Shown: positions 58,320 to 64,000 of the stretch, one piece after another
Position numbering within the stretch: the first letter of the stretch is position 1
Layout: each line of letters begins with the position of its first letter
IMG/VR virus record: IMGVR_UViG_3300009108_000751
Span: 62,001-126,000 of that record
DNA: 64,000 bases
Direction: 5' to 3' (one strand)
Notes under the pieces: model-generated
Databases searched by the model: none
Told to the model about the DNA's origin: nothing
Seen by the model: the letters and a program-made list of their open reading frames with translations, nothing else
Program-made: the position numbers and the translations under genes

Positions 58320-58883
58320 ATGTCAGCACTTTATGAAGCATACGTAAGCTTTCCGCGCTATGACGCACGAAGCGGGCTTGGTTATGGTGCTGCAGATTCT
58401 GCTGTAAAACCAGGCCTATCAGTCGGAAAACCGATGTCAATGCCTGGGCTCTATCCCTACAAAGAGCCTCCCACAGACGTCGATGACGACGGAGAAGACC
58501 TTCCCGCCAAGGACAAAAAGAAGGTAATTAATAAAGTGGGTGGCATTACTCGTATTAACGATCCTTTTTCTAGTAACTGGGTAGATAGAGGCGCTTTTGT
58601 TAACTGGGCAACTCGCCTTGATTTATACGAAGCAAGAAACGCAGTAGACTTAGAGGACGTTGTAAGAGGACTCGAGGGAAGTAGTTCAACAGGTGGCATG
58701 AGTCAATTTGTTGCTATGGGAAATGGGGCGGGAATTTATAAGACCCGGTATGGAAAAACAATAGGAATGGATATAGGCGGCAGGCCACAATCATATTCTG
58801 CGACAAAGACAACAAAGAAGATACCTCCATCTTTATCAGACTTTATCAAAGACTATCTAAGGGATGAAGATGAAGAGATCTAA
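58320..58883 (+). CDS. Hypothetical protein
   Basis: Fills gap between 165-aa ORF and bS21. Confidence 0.6.
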   Translation: MSALYEAYVSFPRYDARSGLGYGAADSAVKPGLSVGKPMSMPGLYPYKEPPTDVDDDGEDLPAKDKKKVINKVGGITRINDPFSSNWVDRGAFVNWATRLDLYEARNAVDLEDVVRGLEGSSSTGGMSQFVAMGNGAGIYKTRYGKTIGMDIGGRPQSYSATKTTKKIPPSLSDFIKDYLRDEDEEI

Positions 58884-59097
58884 GAAGTTTCCCGCAGAAT
58901 ATGGTGTCGTTGTAAGGTCTAGACCAAGAGAAAGTACCGACAAATTAATTGCCCGTTTTAAGAGGATGTATAAGCGCTCTGGGTTACAAACTGAAGTAAG
59001 AGAAACGTATATGCAGCGCTTTATGTCAAGATCAGAGAAAAAGAGAATGAAAAAAAATAGAGCAAAGAGAAGGGCTCTGAAAAACAGCAAAGGGTGA
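58864..59097 (+). CDS. rpsU: Phage-encoded 30S ribosomal protein bS21
   Basis: VVVRSRPRESTDKLIARFKRMYKRSGLQTEVR...FMSRSEKKRMKKNRAKRR aligns by eye with bacterial S21 ([30 protein letters not shown]...YEKPTTERKRAKASAVKR); start may be 58864 or 58870. Confidence 0.85.
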   Translation: MKMKRSKKFPAEYGVVVRSRPRESTDKLIARFKRMYKRSGLQTEVRETYMQRFMSRSEKKRMKKNRAKRRALKNSKG

Positions 59098-59124: not shown

Positions 59125-59144
59125 AGTGTAGATGGGTGAGGACT

Positions 59145-60566
59145 ATGACCAGTAATCTCTATGAAGAAGCCATTGCAGATGCTCGAAAGTTACGTGAGAT
59201 AGCTGAGCAAAATGCTAAAAATGCGATCATTGAATCGATAACACCAAAAATTCGTGACTTAATAGAATCCCAAATAATTGGGGACGAAGTGGATTTTGAC
59301 GAATCTGATATCATAGAAGAAACAGCTGCTCAGGCTTCTCAAGATGATGATCAAGAATTCGATATGACTCCCGAAGCTGCGCAAGAGCTCAGGACCATGC
59401 TTGAAAACGATTCGCCTGAAGAGCAGGACGCTCCACCCGATCCCAATAGCGAAGAAGCTTCAATAGTTTCTTCTGCCGCTTATATCAAAGAATGCAATGA
59501 GTACATCGAGACAGTCCGCGAAGTACTCGAAAAAGTCAGGGGAACTAACCCGGCTGAACTTAATGAACAGGACTTACAAAAATATTTGGCTCTGGTCGCA
59601 ATATCAGACCGAGCAGTTAATAAATTATCCGAAATGATGGCAACCGCCGAAGGTATGCAAATCTTCGAAGGTGTCATCCAGAACTCTCAAGATCAGATTC
59701 ACAACTTTAAAAAGGAGATAAAAGAAATGAAGAGATCACTAAGGGACCTATTGTCCGAGGAAGTTATAACCATAGAGCTGGATCTCGGTGAGGATGCCGT
59801 AGTGGATTCTGAAGAAATCTCAGTTAAGGTTAAAGAAGAAGAGCCCCCACTTATCGACGCCGAAGCCGGCGAAGACGAAGAAGAGGGCGACGAAGATGTC
59901 GATGTCGAAGAAGTCGATGTCGATGTCGATGTCGATGTCGAAGAAGACAAAGTCAAAGTCGGAGAGCTTGAAGAGATGATCCTTGAGCTTGAAGAGGAAG
60001 AGGAAGAGGAAGAAGACATGGAAGAAGATGACATGATGGAAGGCCTCGACGACGACACTGTTCTTGAAATTGACGAAAACATGCTGCGCGAGGAGCTCGC
60101 TAAGATTATGCAAGAAAGCGAAGAGTCCGCAGAAGAAGTTATTGAAGAAGCCTCGGAAGAGGAAGAAGTATTAGAAGAAACGGCCGAGTCAGTCGCCACC
60201 GAGCAAAATGACGAACTCCAAGCCGAGATAGAGAGCTATCAGAGCGCAGTTGCTGACCTCCAGTCACAACTCGCCGAGATGAGCTTGTTTAACGCGAAGC
60301 TGCTCTACACCAATAAGCTGCTAATGAATAGCGATCTCAGCCAGACCCAACGGGCACAGGCCATAGAAACGCTCGATGACGCCGCAAGCTTGCGAGAGGT
60401 GAAGCTTCTATTTAAGACTCTTACAGAGTCATTTAGTAAGCGCGCAGAGGATAAAACATCTTCTCGCAATATCGGCGGCGCAAGTCGTCCAACCAAGTCT
60501 GCATCAATGAACTTGAATGAGTCCACCGAGGCTAATCGATGGGCATTGCTGGCAGGCATAAAGTAA
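59145..60566 (+). CDS. Prohead core scaffold protein, T4 gp22-like, very acidic (ATG 59145)
   Basis: NLYEEAIADARKLREIAEQNAKNAII start, long acidic linker, coiled-coil SLFNAKLLYTNKL; immediately upstream of capsid gene; GAGG RBS at 59138. Confidence 0.8.
   Translation: MTSNLYEEAIADARKLREIAEQNAKNAIIESITPKIRDLIESQIIGDEVDFDESDIIEETAAQASQDDDQEFDMTPEAAQELRTMLENDSPEEQDAPPDPNSEEASIVSSAAYIKECNEYIETVREVLEKVRGTNPAELNEQDLQKYLALVAISDRAVNKLSEMMATAEGMQIFEGVIQNSQDQIHNFKKEIKEMKRSLRDLLSEEVITIELDLGEDAVVDSEEISVKVKEEEPPLIDAEAGEDEEEGDEDVDVEEVDVDVDVDVEEDKVKVGELEEMILELEEEEEEEEDMEEDDMMEGLDDDTVLEIDENMLREELAKIMQESEESAEEVIEEASEEEEVLEETAESVATEQNDELQAEIESYQSAVADLQSQLAEMSLFNAKLLYTNKLLMNSDLSQTQRAQAIETLDDAASLREVKLLFKTLTESFSKRAEDKTSSRNIGGASRPTKSASMNLNESTEANRWALLAGIK
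59895..59939 (+). repeat. In-frame GATGTC microsatellite (Asp-Val)n
   Basis: GATGTC x2 (59895-59906) and x4 (59916-59939). Confidence 0.9.
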
Positions 60567-60597: not shown

Positions 60598-62514
60598 ATG
60601 TCTAAGTTTTCACTCGAAACGCTAGCCGAAGGAATTCGGTCGCGTCACATGGGTGAGGAGAACTCCCGCTTGGTCGAAAAGTGGTCTCGCACCGGTCTGC
60701 TCCGCGGCCTGGAATCAACAAAGCGCGAAAACATGGCGCGCCTTCTTGAGAACCAGACTGCAGAGCTTCTTCGTGAGCAAAGCACAATCGGCACAGGCGG
60801 CGGAGCTGGCACCGCTTCTGGTGACCTTCGCGGTTTCTCCAATATCGCCTTTCCAATCGTTCGTCGTGTATTCGGCGGACTTGTCGCAAATGAGCTGGTA
60901 TCCATCCAGCCCATGAGCTTGCCTTCTGGCCTGCTCTTTTATCTTGACTACACCTACGGTTCTAACGTTGGTGGTGACGCATCTCTCACAACGGGCGATG
61001 CAGGAACCTACGACAAAGAAACGTATCAGCGTGGTCAATCCATCTATAACAACCCAACTGGCAAGGGCGTACGCTCTGGTTCATTGGCAACAGGCGGTCA
61101 GTATGACTTGGTCGGTGCAACTTACTCTAAGGTGCACAGCTCCTCGATCTCACCAACCGTTATGTTTGCTGGTGCACACGGTGCAAACTCATCCTTGACA
61201 TCCGGTTCGTTGTGCCATGCCACAGGTTCAGATGCTAAGTTGCTCCAATTCGATCCTCAAGTTCTTGACTTGATCGAAAACGATCCCGGTCTTGACGGTG
61301 ATGGACGCTTCTGCATCGTCATTGTGGACGTCACTGATGCACCCTTTAACAATGTCGATCTTACGAACGCCAAGGACATTTCCTTGTTCTCAGCAGTTCC
61401 TGAGGTTCGTACAGGTGTTAAAGAGCTTGGTGCTAGCTTCCAGGGCGGCAAAGGTATTCTTAACCTCCGTCGCTTGAACCAGCTTGGTACGTTTGCGAAC
61501 AACAAGTTTACCGCAGATCCCATGGTAACAAGAAGCACATCAAATGCTGCTCTCTTGACAGTTATGTCTGGTAACTTCAGCGGTAAAATTGATGCCGGTG
61601 ATGCTGCTACAGCATACCTCTCAGCATCATATGCCATTGGCCCAACATTGAATGTAGAAGACGGTTCTGGTTCTACCCTTACCATTCCTTCATTCGAATC
61701 TGATTTCGGTACTACACCTTCACCAGTGATCCCTGAAATCGACATTAAGGTTGAGTCCATCGCAGTTACAGCTGCTACACGCAAGCTGAGAGCTCGTTGG
61801 TCGCCAGAATTGGCACAGGACCTTAACGCATACCACAGCCTTGACGCTGAGGTTGAGTTGACACAGATCCTTTCTGAGCAAGTTGCTCTTGAAATCGATC
61901 GTGAAATCCTGAATGACCTGCTTAGCGAAGCCCAGGGCGCAAACCTTTACTGGTCACGTGCTCCAGGCAAGTTCCTGAACAAGGAAACAGGCGCCGAAGT
62001 TAAGTTGAATGACAGCTTATCTGCAGGTCCTCGTTTCACAGGCACAGTTCGCGAATGGTACGAGACCCTGGTCGAGTCCGTTATCGATGTTGCTAACACC
62101 ATCCACCGCAAGACACTCCGTGGTTCCGCGAACTTCGTGGTCACCTCTCCGGATGTCTGCACAATGTTCGAAGCTTCAGTGATGTATCGCCCAAGCCTCA
62201 GCATTGACAGCGAAGGTCAGGTTTCCTCCCCATTCAGCCTCGGTGCTGAAAAGGTTGGTACCTTGAGCAACCGCTTTACGGTCTACAAGGACCCATACTT
62301 CCCTCGCAACAAGATTCTTGTTGGTTATAAGGGTGGTAGCTACCTTGAGACAGGATACGTTTATGCTCCGTATGTTCCGCTGATCGTCACACCAACGATC
62401 TTCGCGCCAGAAGACTTCACCCCTCGTAAGGGCGTGATGACTCGCTACGGCAAGAAGATGGTTCGCGCTGACTTCTACGGTACCGTTACGGTTGCTGACT
62501 TGAACGTCATCTAA
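60598..62514 (+). CDS. gp23: Major capsid protein, T4 gp23-like, with ~250-aa insertion
   Basis: LLENQ, AFPIVRRVF, VSIQPMSLPSGLLFYLDY, IPEIDIK, TRKLRARWSPELAQDL, EIDREIL, YAPYVPL, GVMTRYG motifs. Confidence 0.96.
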   Translation: MSKFSLETLAEGIRSRHMGEENSRLVEKWSRTGLLRGLESTKRENMARLLENQTAELLREQSTIGTGGGAGTASGDLRGFSNIAFPIVRRVFGGLVANELVSIQPMSLPSGLLFYLDYTYGSNVGGDASLTTGDAGTYDKETYQRGQSIYNNPTGKGVRSGSLATGGQYDLVGATYSKVHSSSISPTVMFAGAHGANSSLTSGSLCHATGSDAKLLQFDPQVLDLIENDPGLDGDGRFCIVIVDVTDAPFNNVDLTNAKDISLFSAVPEVRTGVKELGASFQGGKGILNLRRLNQLGTFANNKFTADPMVTRSTSNAALLTVMSGNFSGKIDAGDAATAYLSASYAIGPTLNVEDGSGSTLTIPSFESDFGTTPSPVIPEIDIKVESIAVTAATRKLRARWSPELAQDLNAYHSLDAEVELTQILSEQVALEIDREILNDLLSEAQGANLYWSRAPGKFLNKETGAEVKLNDSLSAGPRFTGTVREWYETLVESVIDVANTIHRKTLRGSANFVVTSPDVCTMFEASVMYRPSLSIDSEGQVSSPFSLGAEKVGTLSNRFTVYKDPYFPRNKILVGYKGGSYLETGYVYAPYVPLIVTPTIFAPEDFTPRKGVMTRYGKKMVRADFYGTVTVADLNVI

Positions 62515-62523
62515 GCGACAATA

Positions 62524-62572
62524 GAAACTTCGGTTTCATGAAGGGGAGTCCGAAAGGGCTCCCCTTTTTTTT
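62524..62572 (+). terminator. UUCG mini-hairpin plus GAAA-tetraloop intrinsic terminator
   Basis: GAAAC-TTCG-GTTTC (62524-62537); GGGGAGTCC-GAAA-GGGCTCCCC (62543-62564) followed by T8. Confidence 0.92.
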
Positions 62573-62606
62573 GTCTCTTTATTTCCTTAAGATTCCAGCA
62601 CGGGAA

Positions 62607-62705
62607 CATATCTAATAGTAGGCCCGTCACATTGCATAAGGGTGAACTCGCCACCGTGCCGGAATCATGCGAACAAAATAAAGGAGAAAATTATGCCAAA
62701 GGTTA
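62607..62705 (+). repeat. 99-bp perfect direct repeat, copy 1 (promoter-like motif + leader + RBS + first codons)
   Basis: CATATCTAATAGTAGGCCCG...AAAGGAGAAAATTATGCCAAAGGTTA identical to 63150-63248. Confidence 0.97.
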
Positions 62706-63061
62706 TTATTTCTGATGATAAAGGTCTGAACCAAACCGCAGGTTCGGGGCTGGAGTCTAGGAGCGCTCACTATAGTAGCTACGGGACTACTACAGCTTTA
62801 GCAACAGGTTCTTTCCCGCTTCTTCCTGCGGGAATAGTAAACACTGTTGACAGCACTAACAACGCACATGGTGTTAGATTGCCCAACGCTGCAGGAGCAG
62901 GTCAGATCATGATCGTTAGAAATGTAGACAGTGCTCAGGACTGCGTTATTAGAAATCAAGCTGAGACAGGTGCCATCCTTGTCACGCTCGGCGAAGGTAA
63001 GACTGCTCTTTTCGTAAGTACAGCTTCTGGAAATAACTGGTCTGGAAGTCAGCTCGACTAA
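62693..63061 (+). CDS. Small beta-rich virion protein, candidate capsid decoration/head fibre (true start ATG 62693)
   Basis: AAGGAG RBS; MPKVIISDDKGLNQTAGSG paralogous with the next gene; VRLPNAAGAGQIMIVRN. Confidence 0.55.
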   Translation: MPKVIISDDKGLNQTAGSGLESRSAHYSSYGTTTALATGSFPLLPAGIVNTVDSTNNAHGVRLPNAAGAGQIMIVRNVDSAQDCVIRNQAETGAILVTLGEGKTALFVSTASGNNWSGSQLD

Positions 63062-63089
63062 AAGAAAACTCAAAAGTGTTATTGCAATC

Positions 63090-63115
63090 AAGGTGCTCAA
63101 TCGAGCACCTTTTTT
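63090..63115 (+). terminator. Intrinsic terminator
   Basis: AGGTGCTC-AATC-GAGCACCT followed by TTTTT. Confidence 0.85.
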
Positions 63116-63149
63116 GTTTGAATATTTTCTTCTTTTTTAAGATCTTCCC

Positions 63150-63248
63150 CATATCTAATAGTAGGCCCGTCACATTGCATAAGGGTGAACTCGCCACCGT
63201 GCCGGAATCATGCGAACAAAATAAAGGAGAAAATTATGCCAAAGGTTA
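63150..63248 (+). repeat. 99-bp perfect direct repeat, copy 2
   Basis: Identical to 62607-62705; period 543 bp. Confidence 0.97.
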
Positions 63249-63682
63249 CGTATTCAGATTCGAAGGGGCTCGTCCAGACGTCAGGTGCTGGGATGGCTCT
63301 AACCGGCTTCATGCATGGTCAAAAATGCCCACAGAAGTCGGTAACAAGCACAGACACGCTTACTGTTGAAGACAGTGGCAAGTTAATTACCCTGACGGGA
63401 TCAGCATTTACTTTGTCGCTGCCCAGTGTCTCAGCGGCAAAAGGATGCCACTATACGATCGTTGCTGGTCAAGCTGCGAATTATGTCCTTTCTGAGCTCG
63501 TCGGAACTGACGACAACGTTTTGACGATGGTAAGCGTAAATGCGTCTGCTACTGAAAGAGATCACGCTTTTACCACAGCTACTCTGAGTGGCGGAGCTAT
63601 CGGAGACAGGTTTTACGCCGTCTCTAACGGAACTTGGTGGGTCATCACGGCCTTCGCCAATGCTGCCGTAGCCGCCGCATAA
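63236..63682 (+). CDS. Small beta-rich virion protein, candidate capsid decoration/head fibre (true start ATG 63236)
   Basis: MPKVTYSDSKGLVQTSGAG; TLTVEDSGKLITL...LSLPSVSAAKGCHYTIV. Confidence 0.55.
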   Translation: MPKVTYSDSKGLVQTSGAGMALTGFMHGQKCPQKSVTSTDTLTVEDSGKLITLTGSAFTLSLPSVSAAKGCHYTIVAGQAANYVLSELVGTDDNVLTMVSVNASATERDHAFTTATLSGGAIGDRFYAVSNGTWWVITAFANAAVAAA

Positions 63683-63727
63683 TATAGTGGTTGACAGCTA
63701 AGACTTAGTACTGTCACACTAGAAGAG

Positions 63728-63760
63728 AAAGGCGCCCCCAAGTGGGGCGCCTTTTTTTTT
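63728..63760 (+). terminator. Intrinsic terminator
   Basis: GGCGCCCC-CAAGT-GGGGCGCC followed by T9. Confidence 0.92.
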
Positions 63761-63797
63761 GTTCGTTTTTTCGTCTAGACCTAAGTCTCGTGACTTC

Positions 63798-63804
63798 ATA
63801 CTTA
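63798..63804 (+). promoter_or_regulatory. Candidate late promoter ATACTTA
   Basis: After terminator, before GTG start at 63831. Confidence 0.5.
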
Positions 63805-63830
63805 TACTGTGAGAGTTTCTGGAGAGCCTT

Positions 63831-64000
63831 GTGGCAACATTCGCTAATACAACTAACCCAACACCATTCGGTGCTTTTGATAGTGACTCAGAGTTTCAAT
63901 CTGAAGCAGACAAGATGGTTACTTTTGTTAAGAGGAAGCTCGGAGATGACATTCTGTCTGTCGAGTTGACCAAAAAGCAGATCTGGGCTTGTTTCGAAGA
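63831..64000 (+). CDS. Neck protein, T4 gp13-like, 3'-truncated (GTG start; absent from ORF track)
   Basis: Translates MATFANTTNPTPFGAFDSDSEFQSEADKMVTFVKRKLGDDILSVELTKKQIWACFE; RKLG...VELT..QI..C resembles gp13 N-terminus; GGAG RBS at 63821. Confidence 0.7.
   Translation, partial: MATFANTTNPTPFGAFDSDSEFQSEADKMVTFVKRKLGDDILSVELTKKQIWACFE

What the first reader, a model, noticed from the sequence alone, without database searches (positions are those of the whole stretch)
62541..63760. Self-contained gene cassettes with a perfectly identical 99-bp leader
Seen: terminator, 99-bp repeat, ORF A, terminator, identical 99-bp repeat, ORF B, terminator. The repeat covers an ATATCTA promoter variant, a ~70-nt leader, AAGGAG and the first four codons; DNA identity then stops although the proteins stay similar for ~19 aa (MPKVxxSDxKGLxQTxGxG) and diverge afterwards. 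The leader can pair TTGCAT with ATGCGA around GGTG-AACT-CGCC, or GGCCCG with CGTGCC. Inference: either a conserved cis-regulatory RNA or a recombination handle (543-bp period) that swaps, deletes or amplifies variable decoration genes sharing a capsid-anchoring N-terminus.
Basis: partly seen in the sequence, partly recalled or inferred. Interest (0 to 1): 0.7.

Follow-up and report, generated by a model that had tools for sequence, protein, structure and literature searches.

The report
Pseudoknot leader cassette before phage knob genes
The identical 99-bp repeat is a complete late-gene control unit of a marine jumbo T4-like phage: a promoter, a previously uncatalogued pseudoknotted RNA leader, a ribosome site and the start of a shared anchor peptide. 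It sits in front of two swappable trimeric "knob" genes, and recombination has kept the two copies identical.

Summary
An exact 99-nt direct repeat lies at 62607-62705 and 63150-63248, with a 543-nt period. Each copy follows an intrinsic terminator and precedes one small ORF.

The repeat holds a late-promoter-like ATATCTA and an RNA element of about 50 nt. This element has two nested helices (P1, P2) plus a pseudoknot between the P2 loop and a conserved downstream GCATGYGRA. AAGGAG and codons 1-4 follow.

I found 110 distinct versions of the RNA element in marine viral and metagenomic contigs. About 96% of cells pair, against about 76% in shuffles and 23-37% in slid controls. The pseudoknot covaries at two positions. 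Rfam 15 has no match.

The element precedes 114-291-aa proteins that start MPKVxxTxxKGLxQxxGxG and then diverge, or Lys-rich proteins. These genes always lie next to the gp13 neck gene. ORF A and ORF B are remote paralogs. ORF B is a predicted homotrimer whose body matches the knob of the Pa223 capsid spike.

The perfect identity comes from gene conversion: a 96%-identical relative keeps slot-specific variants in copy 1. Close relatives carry A only, B first, or other cassettes, with breakpoints at the leader or the terminators.

The RNA's mechanism and the virion docking site remain unproven.

The parts
62540..62567 (+). Intrinsic terminator after the gp23-type major capsid gene (60598-62514)
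   Evidence: 12-bp GC-rich stem followed by a T run. MCP matches Pfam Gp23 at 6.5e-75.
62607..62705 (+). 99-nt repeat, copy 1: the whole regulatory cassette
   Evidence: Exact repeat boundaries.
62608..62614 (+). Late-promoter-like -10 element ATATCTA. The inferred transcript start is near 62620-62621.
   Evidence: A-T-A-Y-N-T-A is 82-100% conserved at fixed spacing from P1 in 65 distinct upstream regions. The same motif recurs before many + strand genes of the genome, 68 on + against 34 on -. The start site is inferred from T4 late-promoter geometry and was not measured.
62624..62662 (+). Helix P1 (62624-62630 with 62656-62662) enclosing helix P2 (62641-62644 with 62652-62655). A U.C mismatch at 62627/62659 is present in both copies.
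   Evidence: Covariation counts. RNAalifold recovers P1 and P2 on its own.
62648..62672 (+). Pseudoknot: P2-loop TCGC (62648-62651) pairs with GCGA (62669-62672) inside the conserved GCATGYGRA
   Evidence: 99.6-100% paired. Two positions covary: TCGC/GCGA, CCAC/GUGG, CCGC/GCGG, UCAC/GUGA. The search pattern did not demand complementarity.
62681..62686 (+). Shine-Dalgarno AAGGAG, 6 nt before the ATG at 62693
   Evidence: Read directly from the sequence.
62693..63061 (+). ORF A, 122 aa: N-terminal beta-hairpin peptide followed by a beta-sandwich body
   Evidence: 16 homologs. AF2 pLDDT 82.6. Foldseek match to the Solidus tailspike depolymerase, 2e-4, TMq 0.61.
63090..63111 (+). Intrinsic terminator after ORF A
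63150..63248 (+). 99-nt repeat, copy 2. All elements sit at copy-1 coordinates plus 543: promoter 63151-63157, P1 63167-63173/63199-63205, P2 63184-63187/63195-63198, pseudoknot 63191-63194/63212-63215, SD 63224-63229.
63236..63682 (+). ORF B, 148 aa: the same N-terminal peptide followed by a trimeric knob domain (residues about 30-148)
   Evidence: 51 homologs. AF2 pLDDT 89. VIA-align Z 12.2 to the Pa223 capsid-spike knob. Homotrimer ipSAE 0.88 against 0.00 for the best control.
63722..63760 (+). Intrinsic terminator after ORF B
63798..64000 (+). ATACTTA promoter-like site (63798-63804) and the start (GTG 63831) of the gp13-like neck gene. This is the right-hand conserved flank of the variable locus.
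   Evidence: Orthologs carry PF26809 Phage_T4_gp13. Homology to relatives resumes between 63744 (L038) and 63832 (L021); in L017, L009 and L090 it resumes at 63780-63794.

Best explanation
Each 99-bp copy is a complete control unit for one monocistronic late transcript. The transcript starts a few bases after an ATAYNTA late-type promoter. It immediately folds into a compact H-type pseudoknot: P1 of 7 bp encloses a P2 hairpin, and 4 nt of the P2 loop pair with the conserved GCATGYGRA downstream of P1. An A-rich unstructured linker, a strong Shine-Dalgarno site and the ORF follow.

The pseudoknot is a conserved cis-acting RNA of a widespread group of marine T4-like phages. It serves one small set of late genes next to the neck gene gp13. 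These are paralogous trimeric knob proteins with a common N-terminal beta-hairpin (MPKVxxTxxKGLxQxxGxG), plus Lys-rich proteins.

I infer that it works after transcription, as a 5'-terminal structure that protects the mRNA, serves as an operator or enhancer for a trans factor, or both. This would resemble the pseudoknotted 5' leader of T4 gene 32. It is less likely to work by hiding the ribosome site.

Because the unit is repeated, it is also a substrate for homologous recombination. In this phage's lineage, gene conversion made copy 1 identical to copy 2. Among relatives, the same homology together with the terminators delimits cassettes that are gained, lost or replaced.

Shown: the structure, its spread, the gene association, the conversion and the cassette breakpoints. 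Inferred: the transcript start, the RNA's molecular function and the virion site of the proteins.
For: Structure. On 66 distinct viral sequences, 96.5% of cells pair, against 76.4% in shuffles and 23-37% when slid. There are 184 double-sided changes against 47 expected, and the covariation score is 0.58 against 0.19. An independent metagenome set of 61 distinct sequences replicates this: 96.2% paired, with the pseudoknot 100% paired. The first 15-sequence set agrees. RNAalifold finds P1 and P2 unaided.

Spread. 87 viral stretches matched the pattern, as did at least 120 metagenome stretches, of which 69 covariance-model matches came from the first 100. The union is 110 distinct sequences.

Promoter. 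It sits at a fixed distance from P1, and the same motif occurs genome-wide.

Genes served. These are MPKV-class proteins and K-rich proteins. In another clade one leader heads an operon of 2-3 knob paralogs plus a K-rich gene just before gp13.

Not coding. Linker length modulo 3 is spread 25/23/41, and only 32 of 89 leaders are open in frame.

Peptide constraint is at the protein level. G11 is invariant but uses all four codons, and L12 uses six.

Gene conversion. L005 is 96.5% identical overall. Its copy 1 shares C, C and T at three sites with the slot-1 leader of L090. The window's copy 1 instead carries the copy-2 states A, G and A.

Cassette swaps. L090 is 93.6% identical up to 62748, then carries a different gene, and homology resumes at 63794 at 98.6%. 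L017 lacks 63120-63779. L009 has MCP-leader-B, which is what a leader-by-leader deletion of the window's array would give.

Proteins.
Against: There are no transcript data. The metatranscriptome contigs did not cover the leader, so the 5' end, and even transcription of the element, are inferred.

The single-sequence fold is weak: -11.9 kcal/mol, z = +2.3 against shuffles. The window's P1 has an internal U.C mismatch.

About 25 near-invariant unpaired bases are more than a mere end-protecting hairpin needs. That leaves room for a ligand- or protein-binding function I cannot identify.

The conversion argument rests on three sites. It could equally be exchange between phages.

A 2023 catalogue of 10,006 unnamed candidate viral RNAs (PMC10690425) may already list this element. 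Its tables were not available.
Confidence: 0.8

Rival explanations
1. The element is a riboswitch. The pseudoknot would be an aptamer for a small molecule or ion, tuning translation of late accessory virion genes to the state of the host.
For: It is a compact H-type pseudoknot with many invariant unpaired bases and strong covariation, as in small pseudoknot riboswitches. It is cis, 5' of the ORF and widespread.
Against: No Rfam family matches, even at E up to 10. The genes served are structural, never metabolic or transport genes. The distance to the start codon varies from 11 to 37 nt. The motif contains no anti-SD complement, and no terminator lies between it and the ORF (direct reading). 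So no expression platform is visible.
Confidence: 0.12
2. The repeat is only a recombination handle or the relic of a recent duplication, and the RNA has no function of its own.
For: The array is tandem, the 99-nt identity is perfect, there is a conversion signature, and cassettes turn over at the locus.
Against: Most phages carry a single copy, yet they conserve the element with compensatory changes in three helices. Within-genome copies elsewhere differ by compensatory changes, as in L009 and L066. A strain with ORF A 2% and ORF B 5% diverged (10 and 30 changed letters) has no change in 62609-62688.
Confidence: 0.04
3. The conserved block acts as DNA, or co-transcriptionally on RNA polymerase. 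Examples are a binding site for a late-transcription factor, or a put-like RNA that modifies polymerase.
For: The spacing to the promoter element is strictly fixed, and the element lies immediately downstream of the inferred start site.
Against: Compensatory changes preserve intramolecular pairing, including a pseudoknot. A duplex-DNA protein site does not need that. Each cassette here ends in a strong terminator, which argues against a terminator-override role in this phage.
Confidence: 0.06
4. The repeat is an assembly artefact.
For: Identical repeats longer than the read k-mer can be mis-joined, and only contig graphs could be examined.
Against: Four assemblies from different samples agree. 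One of them (L005) has distinguishable copies. Repeat depth is about twice the flank depth, and the graph edges are consistent. Arrays of 2 and 3 cassettes exist in other contigs: L009, L066 and L168.
Confidence: 0.02

Closest known systems
T4 gene 32 mRNA 5' leader (pseudoknot operator and mRNA-stabilising leader)
   Same: A T4-type phage mRNA begins with a small pseudoknot, followed by an unstructured A/U-rich stretch up to the ribosome site. It acts in cis after transcription (from my own knowledge; also summarised in PMC10690425).
   Different: There is no sequence relation. Here the element serves several unrelated downstream proteins, so any regulator must be a trans factor rather than the gene's own product. 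Function is untested here.
PeSL cassettes of T4-type phages (Arbiol et al. 2010, PMC2839356; Comeau et al. 2014, PMC4122927)
   Same: Short conserved composite terminator/promoter sequences flank variable ORFs. They serve as points of homologous exchange that create indels and replacements between close relatives.
   Different: PeSLs combine a stem-loop with an early promoter in hyperplastic regions of early genes. Here the promoter is late-type. The conserved block also contains a covarying RNA pseudoknot, the ribosome site and a conserved N-terminal coding segment. The locus lies inside the structural module.
Pseudomonas phage Pa223 capsid spike gp52 (PDB 9ny6; bioRxiv 10.1101/2025.06.11.659172)
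   Same: gp52 is a homotrimer whose short N-terminal segment alone anchors it to the capsid three-fold axes and whose C-terminal knob is exposed. ORF B residues 29-143 superpose on that knob (residues 196-294) with Z 12.2 and rmsd 2.2 A. ORF B is predicted to trimerise with residues 3-33 in the interface.
   Different: ORF B has no triple beta-helix shaft. Its N-terminal peptide is unrelated in sequence. The same knob fold also occurs in tailspike and baseplate proteins (CBA120 TSP4, T4 gp9 and gp10), so the location on the virion is open.
T4 internal proteins with a common capsid-targeting sequence
   Same: A family of small, fast-diverging proteins shares a short conserved N-terminal peptide and a variable body (from my own knowledge).
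   Different: A protease-type hydrophobic-x-Glu site does not consistently follow the peptide: position 21 is D or E in 28 of 88 sequences. The bodies are trimeric knobs typical of external fibres, not basic internal proteins.
Small pseudoknot riboswitches and the marine glutamine-II / Downstream-peptide motif
   Same: These are short pseudoknotted 5' elements found in marine metagenomes and phages, upstream of small ORFs with conserved peptides.
   Different: No covariance-model match. Gene context is structural, and no expression platform is visible.

Membership tests
Any Rfam 15 RNA family | Covariance-model score at or above the family's gathering threshold | tested here: not met
   No hits at gathering threshold on the whole window. 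Only junk hits of 11-21 bits at E up to 10 on 62500-63300, none over the leader core.
PeSL mobile regulatory cassette | Composite terminator stem-loop plus promoter, repeated between variable ORFs | tested here: met
   Terminator, then promoter-like motif, before each cassette.
PeSL mobile regulatory cassette | The promoter is an early (sigma-70-type) promoter in an early-gene hyperplastic region | tested here: not met
   No sigma-70-like site lies in front of the cassettes. The motif is ATAYNTA, shared with structural-gene upstreams. The locus lies between the MCP and neck genes.
PeSL mobile regulatory cassette | Indels and replacements between close relatives have end points in the repeated element | tested here: met
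   Breakpoints at 62699-62748, 63119/63149 and 63780-63794 in L009, L017 and L090. Conversion signature.
PeSL mobile regulatory cassette | Excised circles or recombinant junctions are detectable in replicating DNA | not testable with these tools
   Only Logan k-mer contigs were served, and no joints were reported.
Riboswitch | Conserved structured aptamer with covariation | tested here: met
Riboswitch | Expression platform: alternative pairing with the SD, or a terminator | tested here: not met
   The linker to the start codon varies from 11 to 37 nt and is A-rich, the motif has no anti-SD complement, and there is no terminator before the ORF.
Riboswitch | Specific ligand binding | not testable with these tools
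   Needs in-line probing or ITC.
Trimeric capsid spike / decoration protein (Pa223 gp52-like) | C-terminal knob fold | tested here: met
   Z 12.2, 97 residues, rmsd 2.2 A.
Trimeric capsid spike / decoration protein (Pa223 gp52-like) | Homotrimer | tested here: met
   ipSAE 0.88 (three runs: 0.87-0.91) against 0.00 for the best of 3 controls. The mark was reached by 20 of 30 proteins solved as pairs of one chain and 1 of 23 solved as single chains. Runs agree in at least 95% of contacts and partner pLDDT is at least 89. These calibration counts hold only roughly, because my own alignment and three copies were used. This is a prediction only.
Trimeric capsid spike / decoration protein (Pa223 gp52-like) | The N-terminal segment binds the capsid shell, and the protein is present on virions | not tested
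   No complex with the MCP was modelled, and no proteomics or cryo-EM exists for this uncultured phage.
T4-type internal proteins with capsid-targeting sequence | The N-terminal targeting peptide ends at a prohead-protease site (hydrophobic-x-Glu) | tested here: not met
   ORF A has GLE at residues 19-21 but ORF B does not. Across 88 peptides, position 21 is D or E in 28.

The most novel reading that the evidence does not exclude
The pseudoknot could be a new class of phage-specific regulatory RNA that is read by a dedicated partner. The partner might be a small ligand, a phage protein, or ribosomes altered by the phage's own bS21, which is encoded 3.5 kb upstream. Such a partner would set a separate translational programme for exchangeable host-contact proteins. 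On this reading, promoter, RNA and anchor peptide travel together as a portable "plug" that lets any knob domain be installed and correctly expressed on the virion.
Probability: 0.2. Interest if true: 0.85.

Novelty: new variant of a known kind. Interest (0 to 1): 0.62.

Why it matters
The finding gives an abundant group of uncultured marine jumbo T4-like phages a defined, testable regulatory RNA with a clear secondary structure.

It links that RNA to a family of fast-swapping trimeric knob proteins that are plausible host-contact or decoration parts.

It also shows, at the level of single breakpoints, how a regulatory unit doubles as the homology that shuffles structural cassettes. This extends the PeSL idea from early genes to the late structural module.

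The element is small enough for direct biochemistry.

Tried and rejected
- Single-sequence folding was uninformative, z = +2.3.
- Rfam was searched at gathering and at permissive thresholds and gave nothing.
- PHROGs and Pfam gave nothing for ORF A or ORF B, apart from a sub-threshold Phage_depo_C hit for ORF A.
- The cultured-phage collection has no DNA match to the region and no protein match to ORF B. The nearest cultured MCP is Flavobacterium phage immuto at 45% identity. It and the huge phage LR756508 lack the RNA element.
- A coding (uORF or N-terminal extension) reading of the leader was rejected by frame statistics.
- A capsid-targeting-sequence reading of the shared peptide was rejected because there is no consistent protease site.
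- RNA-seq contigs did not cover the leader.
- The DNA contigs showed no alternative joints, but they cannot exclude them.
- A scan of cellular genomes gave mostly chance matches. The one true instance lies on a 306-kb phage-like contig binned into a MAG, so there is no host clue.
- The supplements of the 10,006-RNA catalogue were not available, so I could not check for prior listing.
Full report
**1. The observation**

The window is part of a 235,681-bp IMG/VR virus record with about 70% estimated completeness. All large ORFs are on the + strand.

The region of interest follows a gp23-type major capsid gene at 60598-62514 (Pfam Gp23, 6.5e-75). It precedes a gp13-like neck gene that starts at GTG 63831; its orthologs carry PF26809.

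An exact 99-nt direct repeat lies at 62607-62705 and 63150-63248, with a 543-nt period. These are the only two copies in the record. Three strong intrinsic terminators bracket the two ORFs, at 62540-62567, 63090-63111 and 63722-63760. ORF A (62693-63061, 122 aa) and ORF B (63236-63682, 148 aa) share 13 of their first 20 residues and nothing else by BLASTP.

**2. Not an artefact**

- Three other IMG/VR contigs from different samples show the same array. One of them (L005) has copies that differ at a few sites.
- In run X1 the k-mer graph contains a 99-nt node equal to the repeat, at depth 25.7. Its three unique neighbours have depths 8.7, 12.1 and 10.3.
- The edges are MCP end into the repeat, repeat into ORF A and back into the repeat, and repeat into ORF B.
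- Only contigs were available, so single-molecule proof is missing.

**3. What the repeat contains**

Orthologous loci fetched through ORF B homologs showed that the leader is about 80% conserved in front of B homologs, and also in front of other small genes.

Two pattern scans enlarged the set. One required the MPK start. The other used only the RNA core and left pseudoknot complementarity free. A covariance model (R1) then confirmed the matches:
- 90 matches, 66 of them distinct, in viral contigs;
- 69 matches, 61 distinct, in the first 100 metagenome loci;
- 110 distinct sequences in all.

The consensus structure, in window coordinates, is:

| Element | Coordinates |
|---|---|
| P1 | 62624-62630 with 62656-62662 |
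| P2 | 62641-62644 with 62652-62655 |
| Pseudoknot | 62648-62651 (P2 loop) with 62669-62672 |

The pair counts are:

| Measure | Viral set | Metagenome set |
|---|---|---|
| Cells paired | 96.5% | 96.2% |
| Paired in shuffles | 76.4% | 75.3% |
| Paired when slid | 23-37% | 24-36% |
| Double-sided changes, observed | 184 | 186 |
| Double-sided changes, shuffle mean | 47 | 51 |
| Covariation score, observed / shuffled | 0.58 / 0.19 | 0.58 / 0.19 |

The pseudoknot is 99.6-100% paired. It switches between UCGC/GCGA, CCAC/GUGG, CCGC/GCGG and UCAC/GUGA. RNAalifold recovers P1 and P2 unaided.

Rfam 15 has no match.

The leader is not coding. Linker lengths are spread over all three frames, and only 32 of 89 leaders are open in frame.

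**4. Promoter and position on the transcript**

In 65 distinct upstream regions, A-T-A-Y-N-T-A is 82-100% conserved at a fixed distance. Its last A lies 10 nt before the first P1 base. It is followed by an invariant T-A-R-G-C-C.

The same motif, mostly ATATTTA, precedes many + strand genes of this genome, 15-35 nt before their ribosome sites. It occurs 68 times on + and 34 times on -. It resembles the T4 late promoter, TATAAATA.

By analogy, transcription would start near 62620-62621, so P1 would begin 3-4 nt from the 5' end. This step is inferred. Metatranscriptome contigs did not cover the leader.

**5. The genes it serves**

Behind the element lies one of two gene types:
- A protein of 114-291 aa that starts M-(P/V)-K-V-x-(I/Y/V)-(T/S)-x-x-K-G-L-x-Q-x-x-G-x-G and then diverges.
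- In about one case in eight, a Lys/Glu/Pro/Ala-rich protein of 76-148 aa.

The peptide is constrained at the protein level. G11 is invariant yet uses all four codons, and L12 uses six.

In another clade, one leader heads an operon of a K-rich gene and two or three MPxV paralogs directly upstream of gp13. The element therefore marks a small late regulon next to the neck gene, not a single gene.

**6. The proteins**

- AF2 models are confident for the bodies: ORF B has pLDDT 89 with residues 31-148 above 90, and ORF A has pLDDT 82.6. The first 20-30 residues form a lower-confidence beta-hairpin.
- ORF B residues 29-143 superpose on the C-terminal knob of the Pa223 capsid spike (Z 12.2).
- They also superpose on the C-terminal domain of a tailspike depolymerase (Z 11), on CBA120 TSP4 (Z 10), and on T4 gp10 and gp9 (Z 8).
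- ORF A hits the same depolymerase domain. Profile comparison links A and B at 94.7% probability.
- A homotrimer of ORF B scores ipSAE 0.88 against 0.00 for the best of 3 controls, with residues 3-33 in the interface. The mark was reached by 20 of 30 proteins solved as pairs of one chain and by 1 of 23 solved as single chains. Those counts hold only roughly here, because my own alignment and three copies were used. The three runs agree in at least 95% of contacts and partner pLDDT is at least 89. This is a prediction only.
- Pa223 gp52 is anchored to capsid three-fold axes solely by its N-terminal 40 residues.
- In a sister clade the ORF-B-type knob carries a different N-terminus (MGSKRIGLARMEALMENLKRE), with a different promoter and a plain 5' hairpin leader. 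The promoter, leader and anchor peptide are thus lineage-specific, and the knob is the exchangeable part.
- Whether the site is the capsid or the neck is unknown.

**7. Why the two copies are identical**

Elsewhere, within-genome copies differ, sometimes by compensatory changes in P1, as in L009 and L066. Selection alone therefore does not demand identity.

L005 is 96.5% identical to the window over 2 kb. At three sites its copy 1 carries C, C and T, as does the slot-1 leader of L090. The window's copy 1 carries A, G and A, exactly as copy 2 does in both phages. The flanks of copy 1 remain slot-1 type.

The simplest reading is a conversion tract from copy 2 into copy 1 in the window's lineage. 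The tract would span promoter to codon 5.

**8. Cassette turnover**

| Relative | Relation to the window |
|---|---|
| L090 | 93.6% identical up to 62748 (about codon 19); then a different 161-aa knob gene; homology returns at 63794 at 98.6% |
| L017 | Carries ORF A only and lacks 63120-63779 (leader 2, ORF B and its terminator) |
| L009 | Reads MCP-leader-B, the product expected from recombination between the window's two repeats; it then carries another leader cassette plus an unrelated gene |
| L168 | Holds three tandem cassettes |

This parallels the PeSL mechanism of T4-type phages (PMC2839356, PMC4122927). The difference is a late promoter, a structured RNA and an N-terminal coding segment as the shared homology.

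**9. Mechanism**

The variable 11-37-nt A-rich linker, the absence of an anti-SD complement and the absence of a terminator before the ORF all argue against a classical expression platform.

The fixed distance to the promoter argues that the position at the 5' end matters. I therefore favour a 5'-terminal protective and/or operator element, as in the pseudoknotted leader of T4 gene 32. About 25 invariant unpaired bases suggest a specific partner. A riboswitch (0.12) or a polymerase- or DNA-level role (0.06) is not excluded.

**10. Novelty and limits**

- The element is absent from Rfam 15 and from cultured phages searched here.
- It may be among the unnamed candidates of PMC10690425, which could not be checked.
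- The kind of thing is known: a cis-regulatory leader RNA, regulatory-cassette shuffling, and anchor-plus-knob proteins.
- The particular RNA, and its fusion with a promoter and an anchor peptide into one portable unit, appear new.
- Function, transcript ends and virion location are unproven.

Noticed in passing
window 58864-59097 (+): The phage encodes a ribosomal protein bS21 homolog inside the head-assembly module, just before the acidic scaffold-like gene. Relatives carry PF01165 at the same place. This may be relevant to how strongly SD-led late mRNAs are translated (compare PMC9723584).
   Followed up: partly
window 59136-60566 (+): A 476-aa extremely acidic protein with Glu/Asp repeat runs lies between the bS21 gene and the MCP. 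It is in the scaffold position, and no family hit was found.
   Followed up: no
window 60598-62514 (+): The 638-aa MCP matches the Gp23 profile in two stretches only (best stretch 362-629). The N-terminal half therefore seems to hold roughly 200 or more extra residues, possibly an insertion domain.
   Followed up: no
whole genome G000; for example window 57787, 59116, 63798: An ATATTTA/ATAYYTA motif lies 15-35 nt before SD and ATG of many + strand genes, 68 times on + against 34 on -. It is a candidate late promoter consensus for this phage group.
   Followed up: partly
L280 (NHDW01000006.1, 305,838 bp): A contig binned as the MAG 'Methylococcaceae bacterium TMED69' carries MCP, the leader, two knob paralogs, gp13 and a sheath gene. 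It looks like a jumbo phage genome inside a MAG.
   Followed up: partly
L168 2095-3520: Three tandem leader cassettes are spaced about 670-690 nt apart, each followed by a different MP/VKV-class protein.
   Followed up: partly
L106 1028-2187; L108 793-1412: A sister clade puts the ORF-B-type knob behind a different promoter (CTATTTA), a plain 5' hairpin (GAACC-loop-GGTTC) and a different N-terminus (MGSKRIGLARMEALMENLKRE). L106 has two such paralogs in tandem.
   Followed up: partly
L039 10288-10722 (-), L044 389-703, L027 3666-4031 (-): Lys/Glu/Pro/Ala-rich low-complexity proteins of 76-148 aa are co-transcribed with, or directly follow, the leader, always beside knob genes and gp13. Their function is unknown.
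   Followed up: no
window 62627/62659 and 63170/63202: Both copies carry the same U.C mismatch in the middle of P1, where most relatives pair.
   Followed up: no
window 62642-63061 and 63185-63682: Mechanical ORF calls start at an in-frame GTG inside the RNA element (MNSPPCRNHANKIKEKIMPKV...). Some database entries for relatives carry such false N-terminal extensions, for example P0002, which starts MRTKEKIMPRV.
   Followed up: yes
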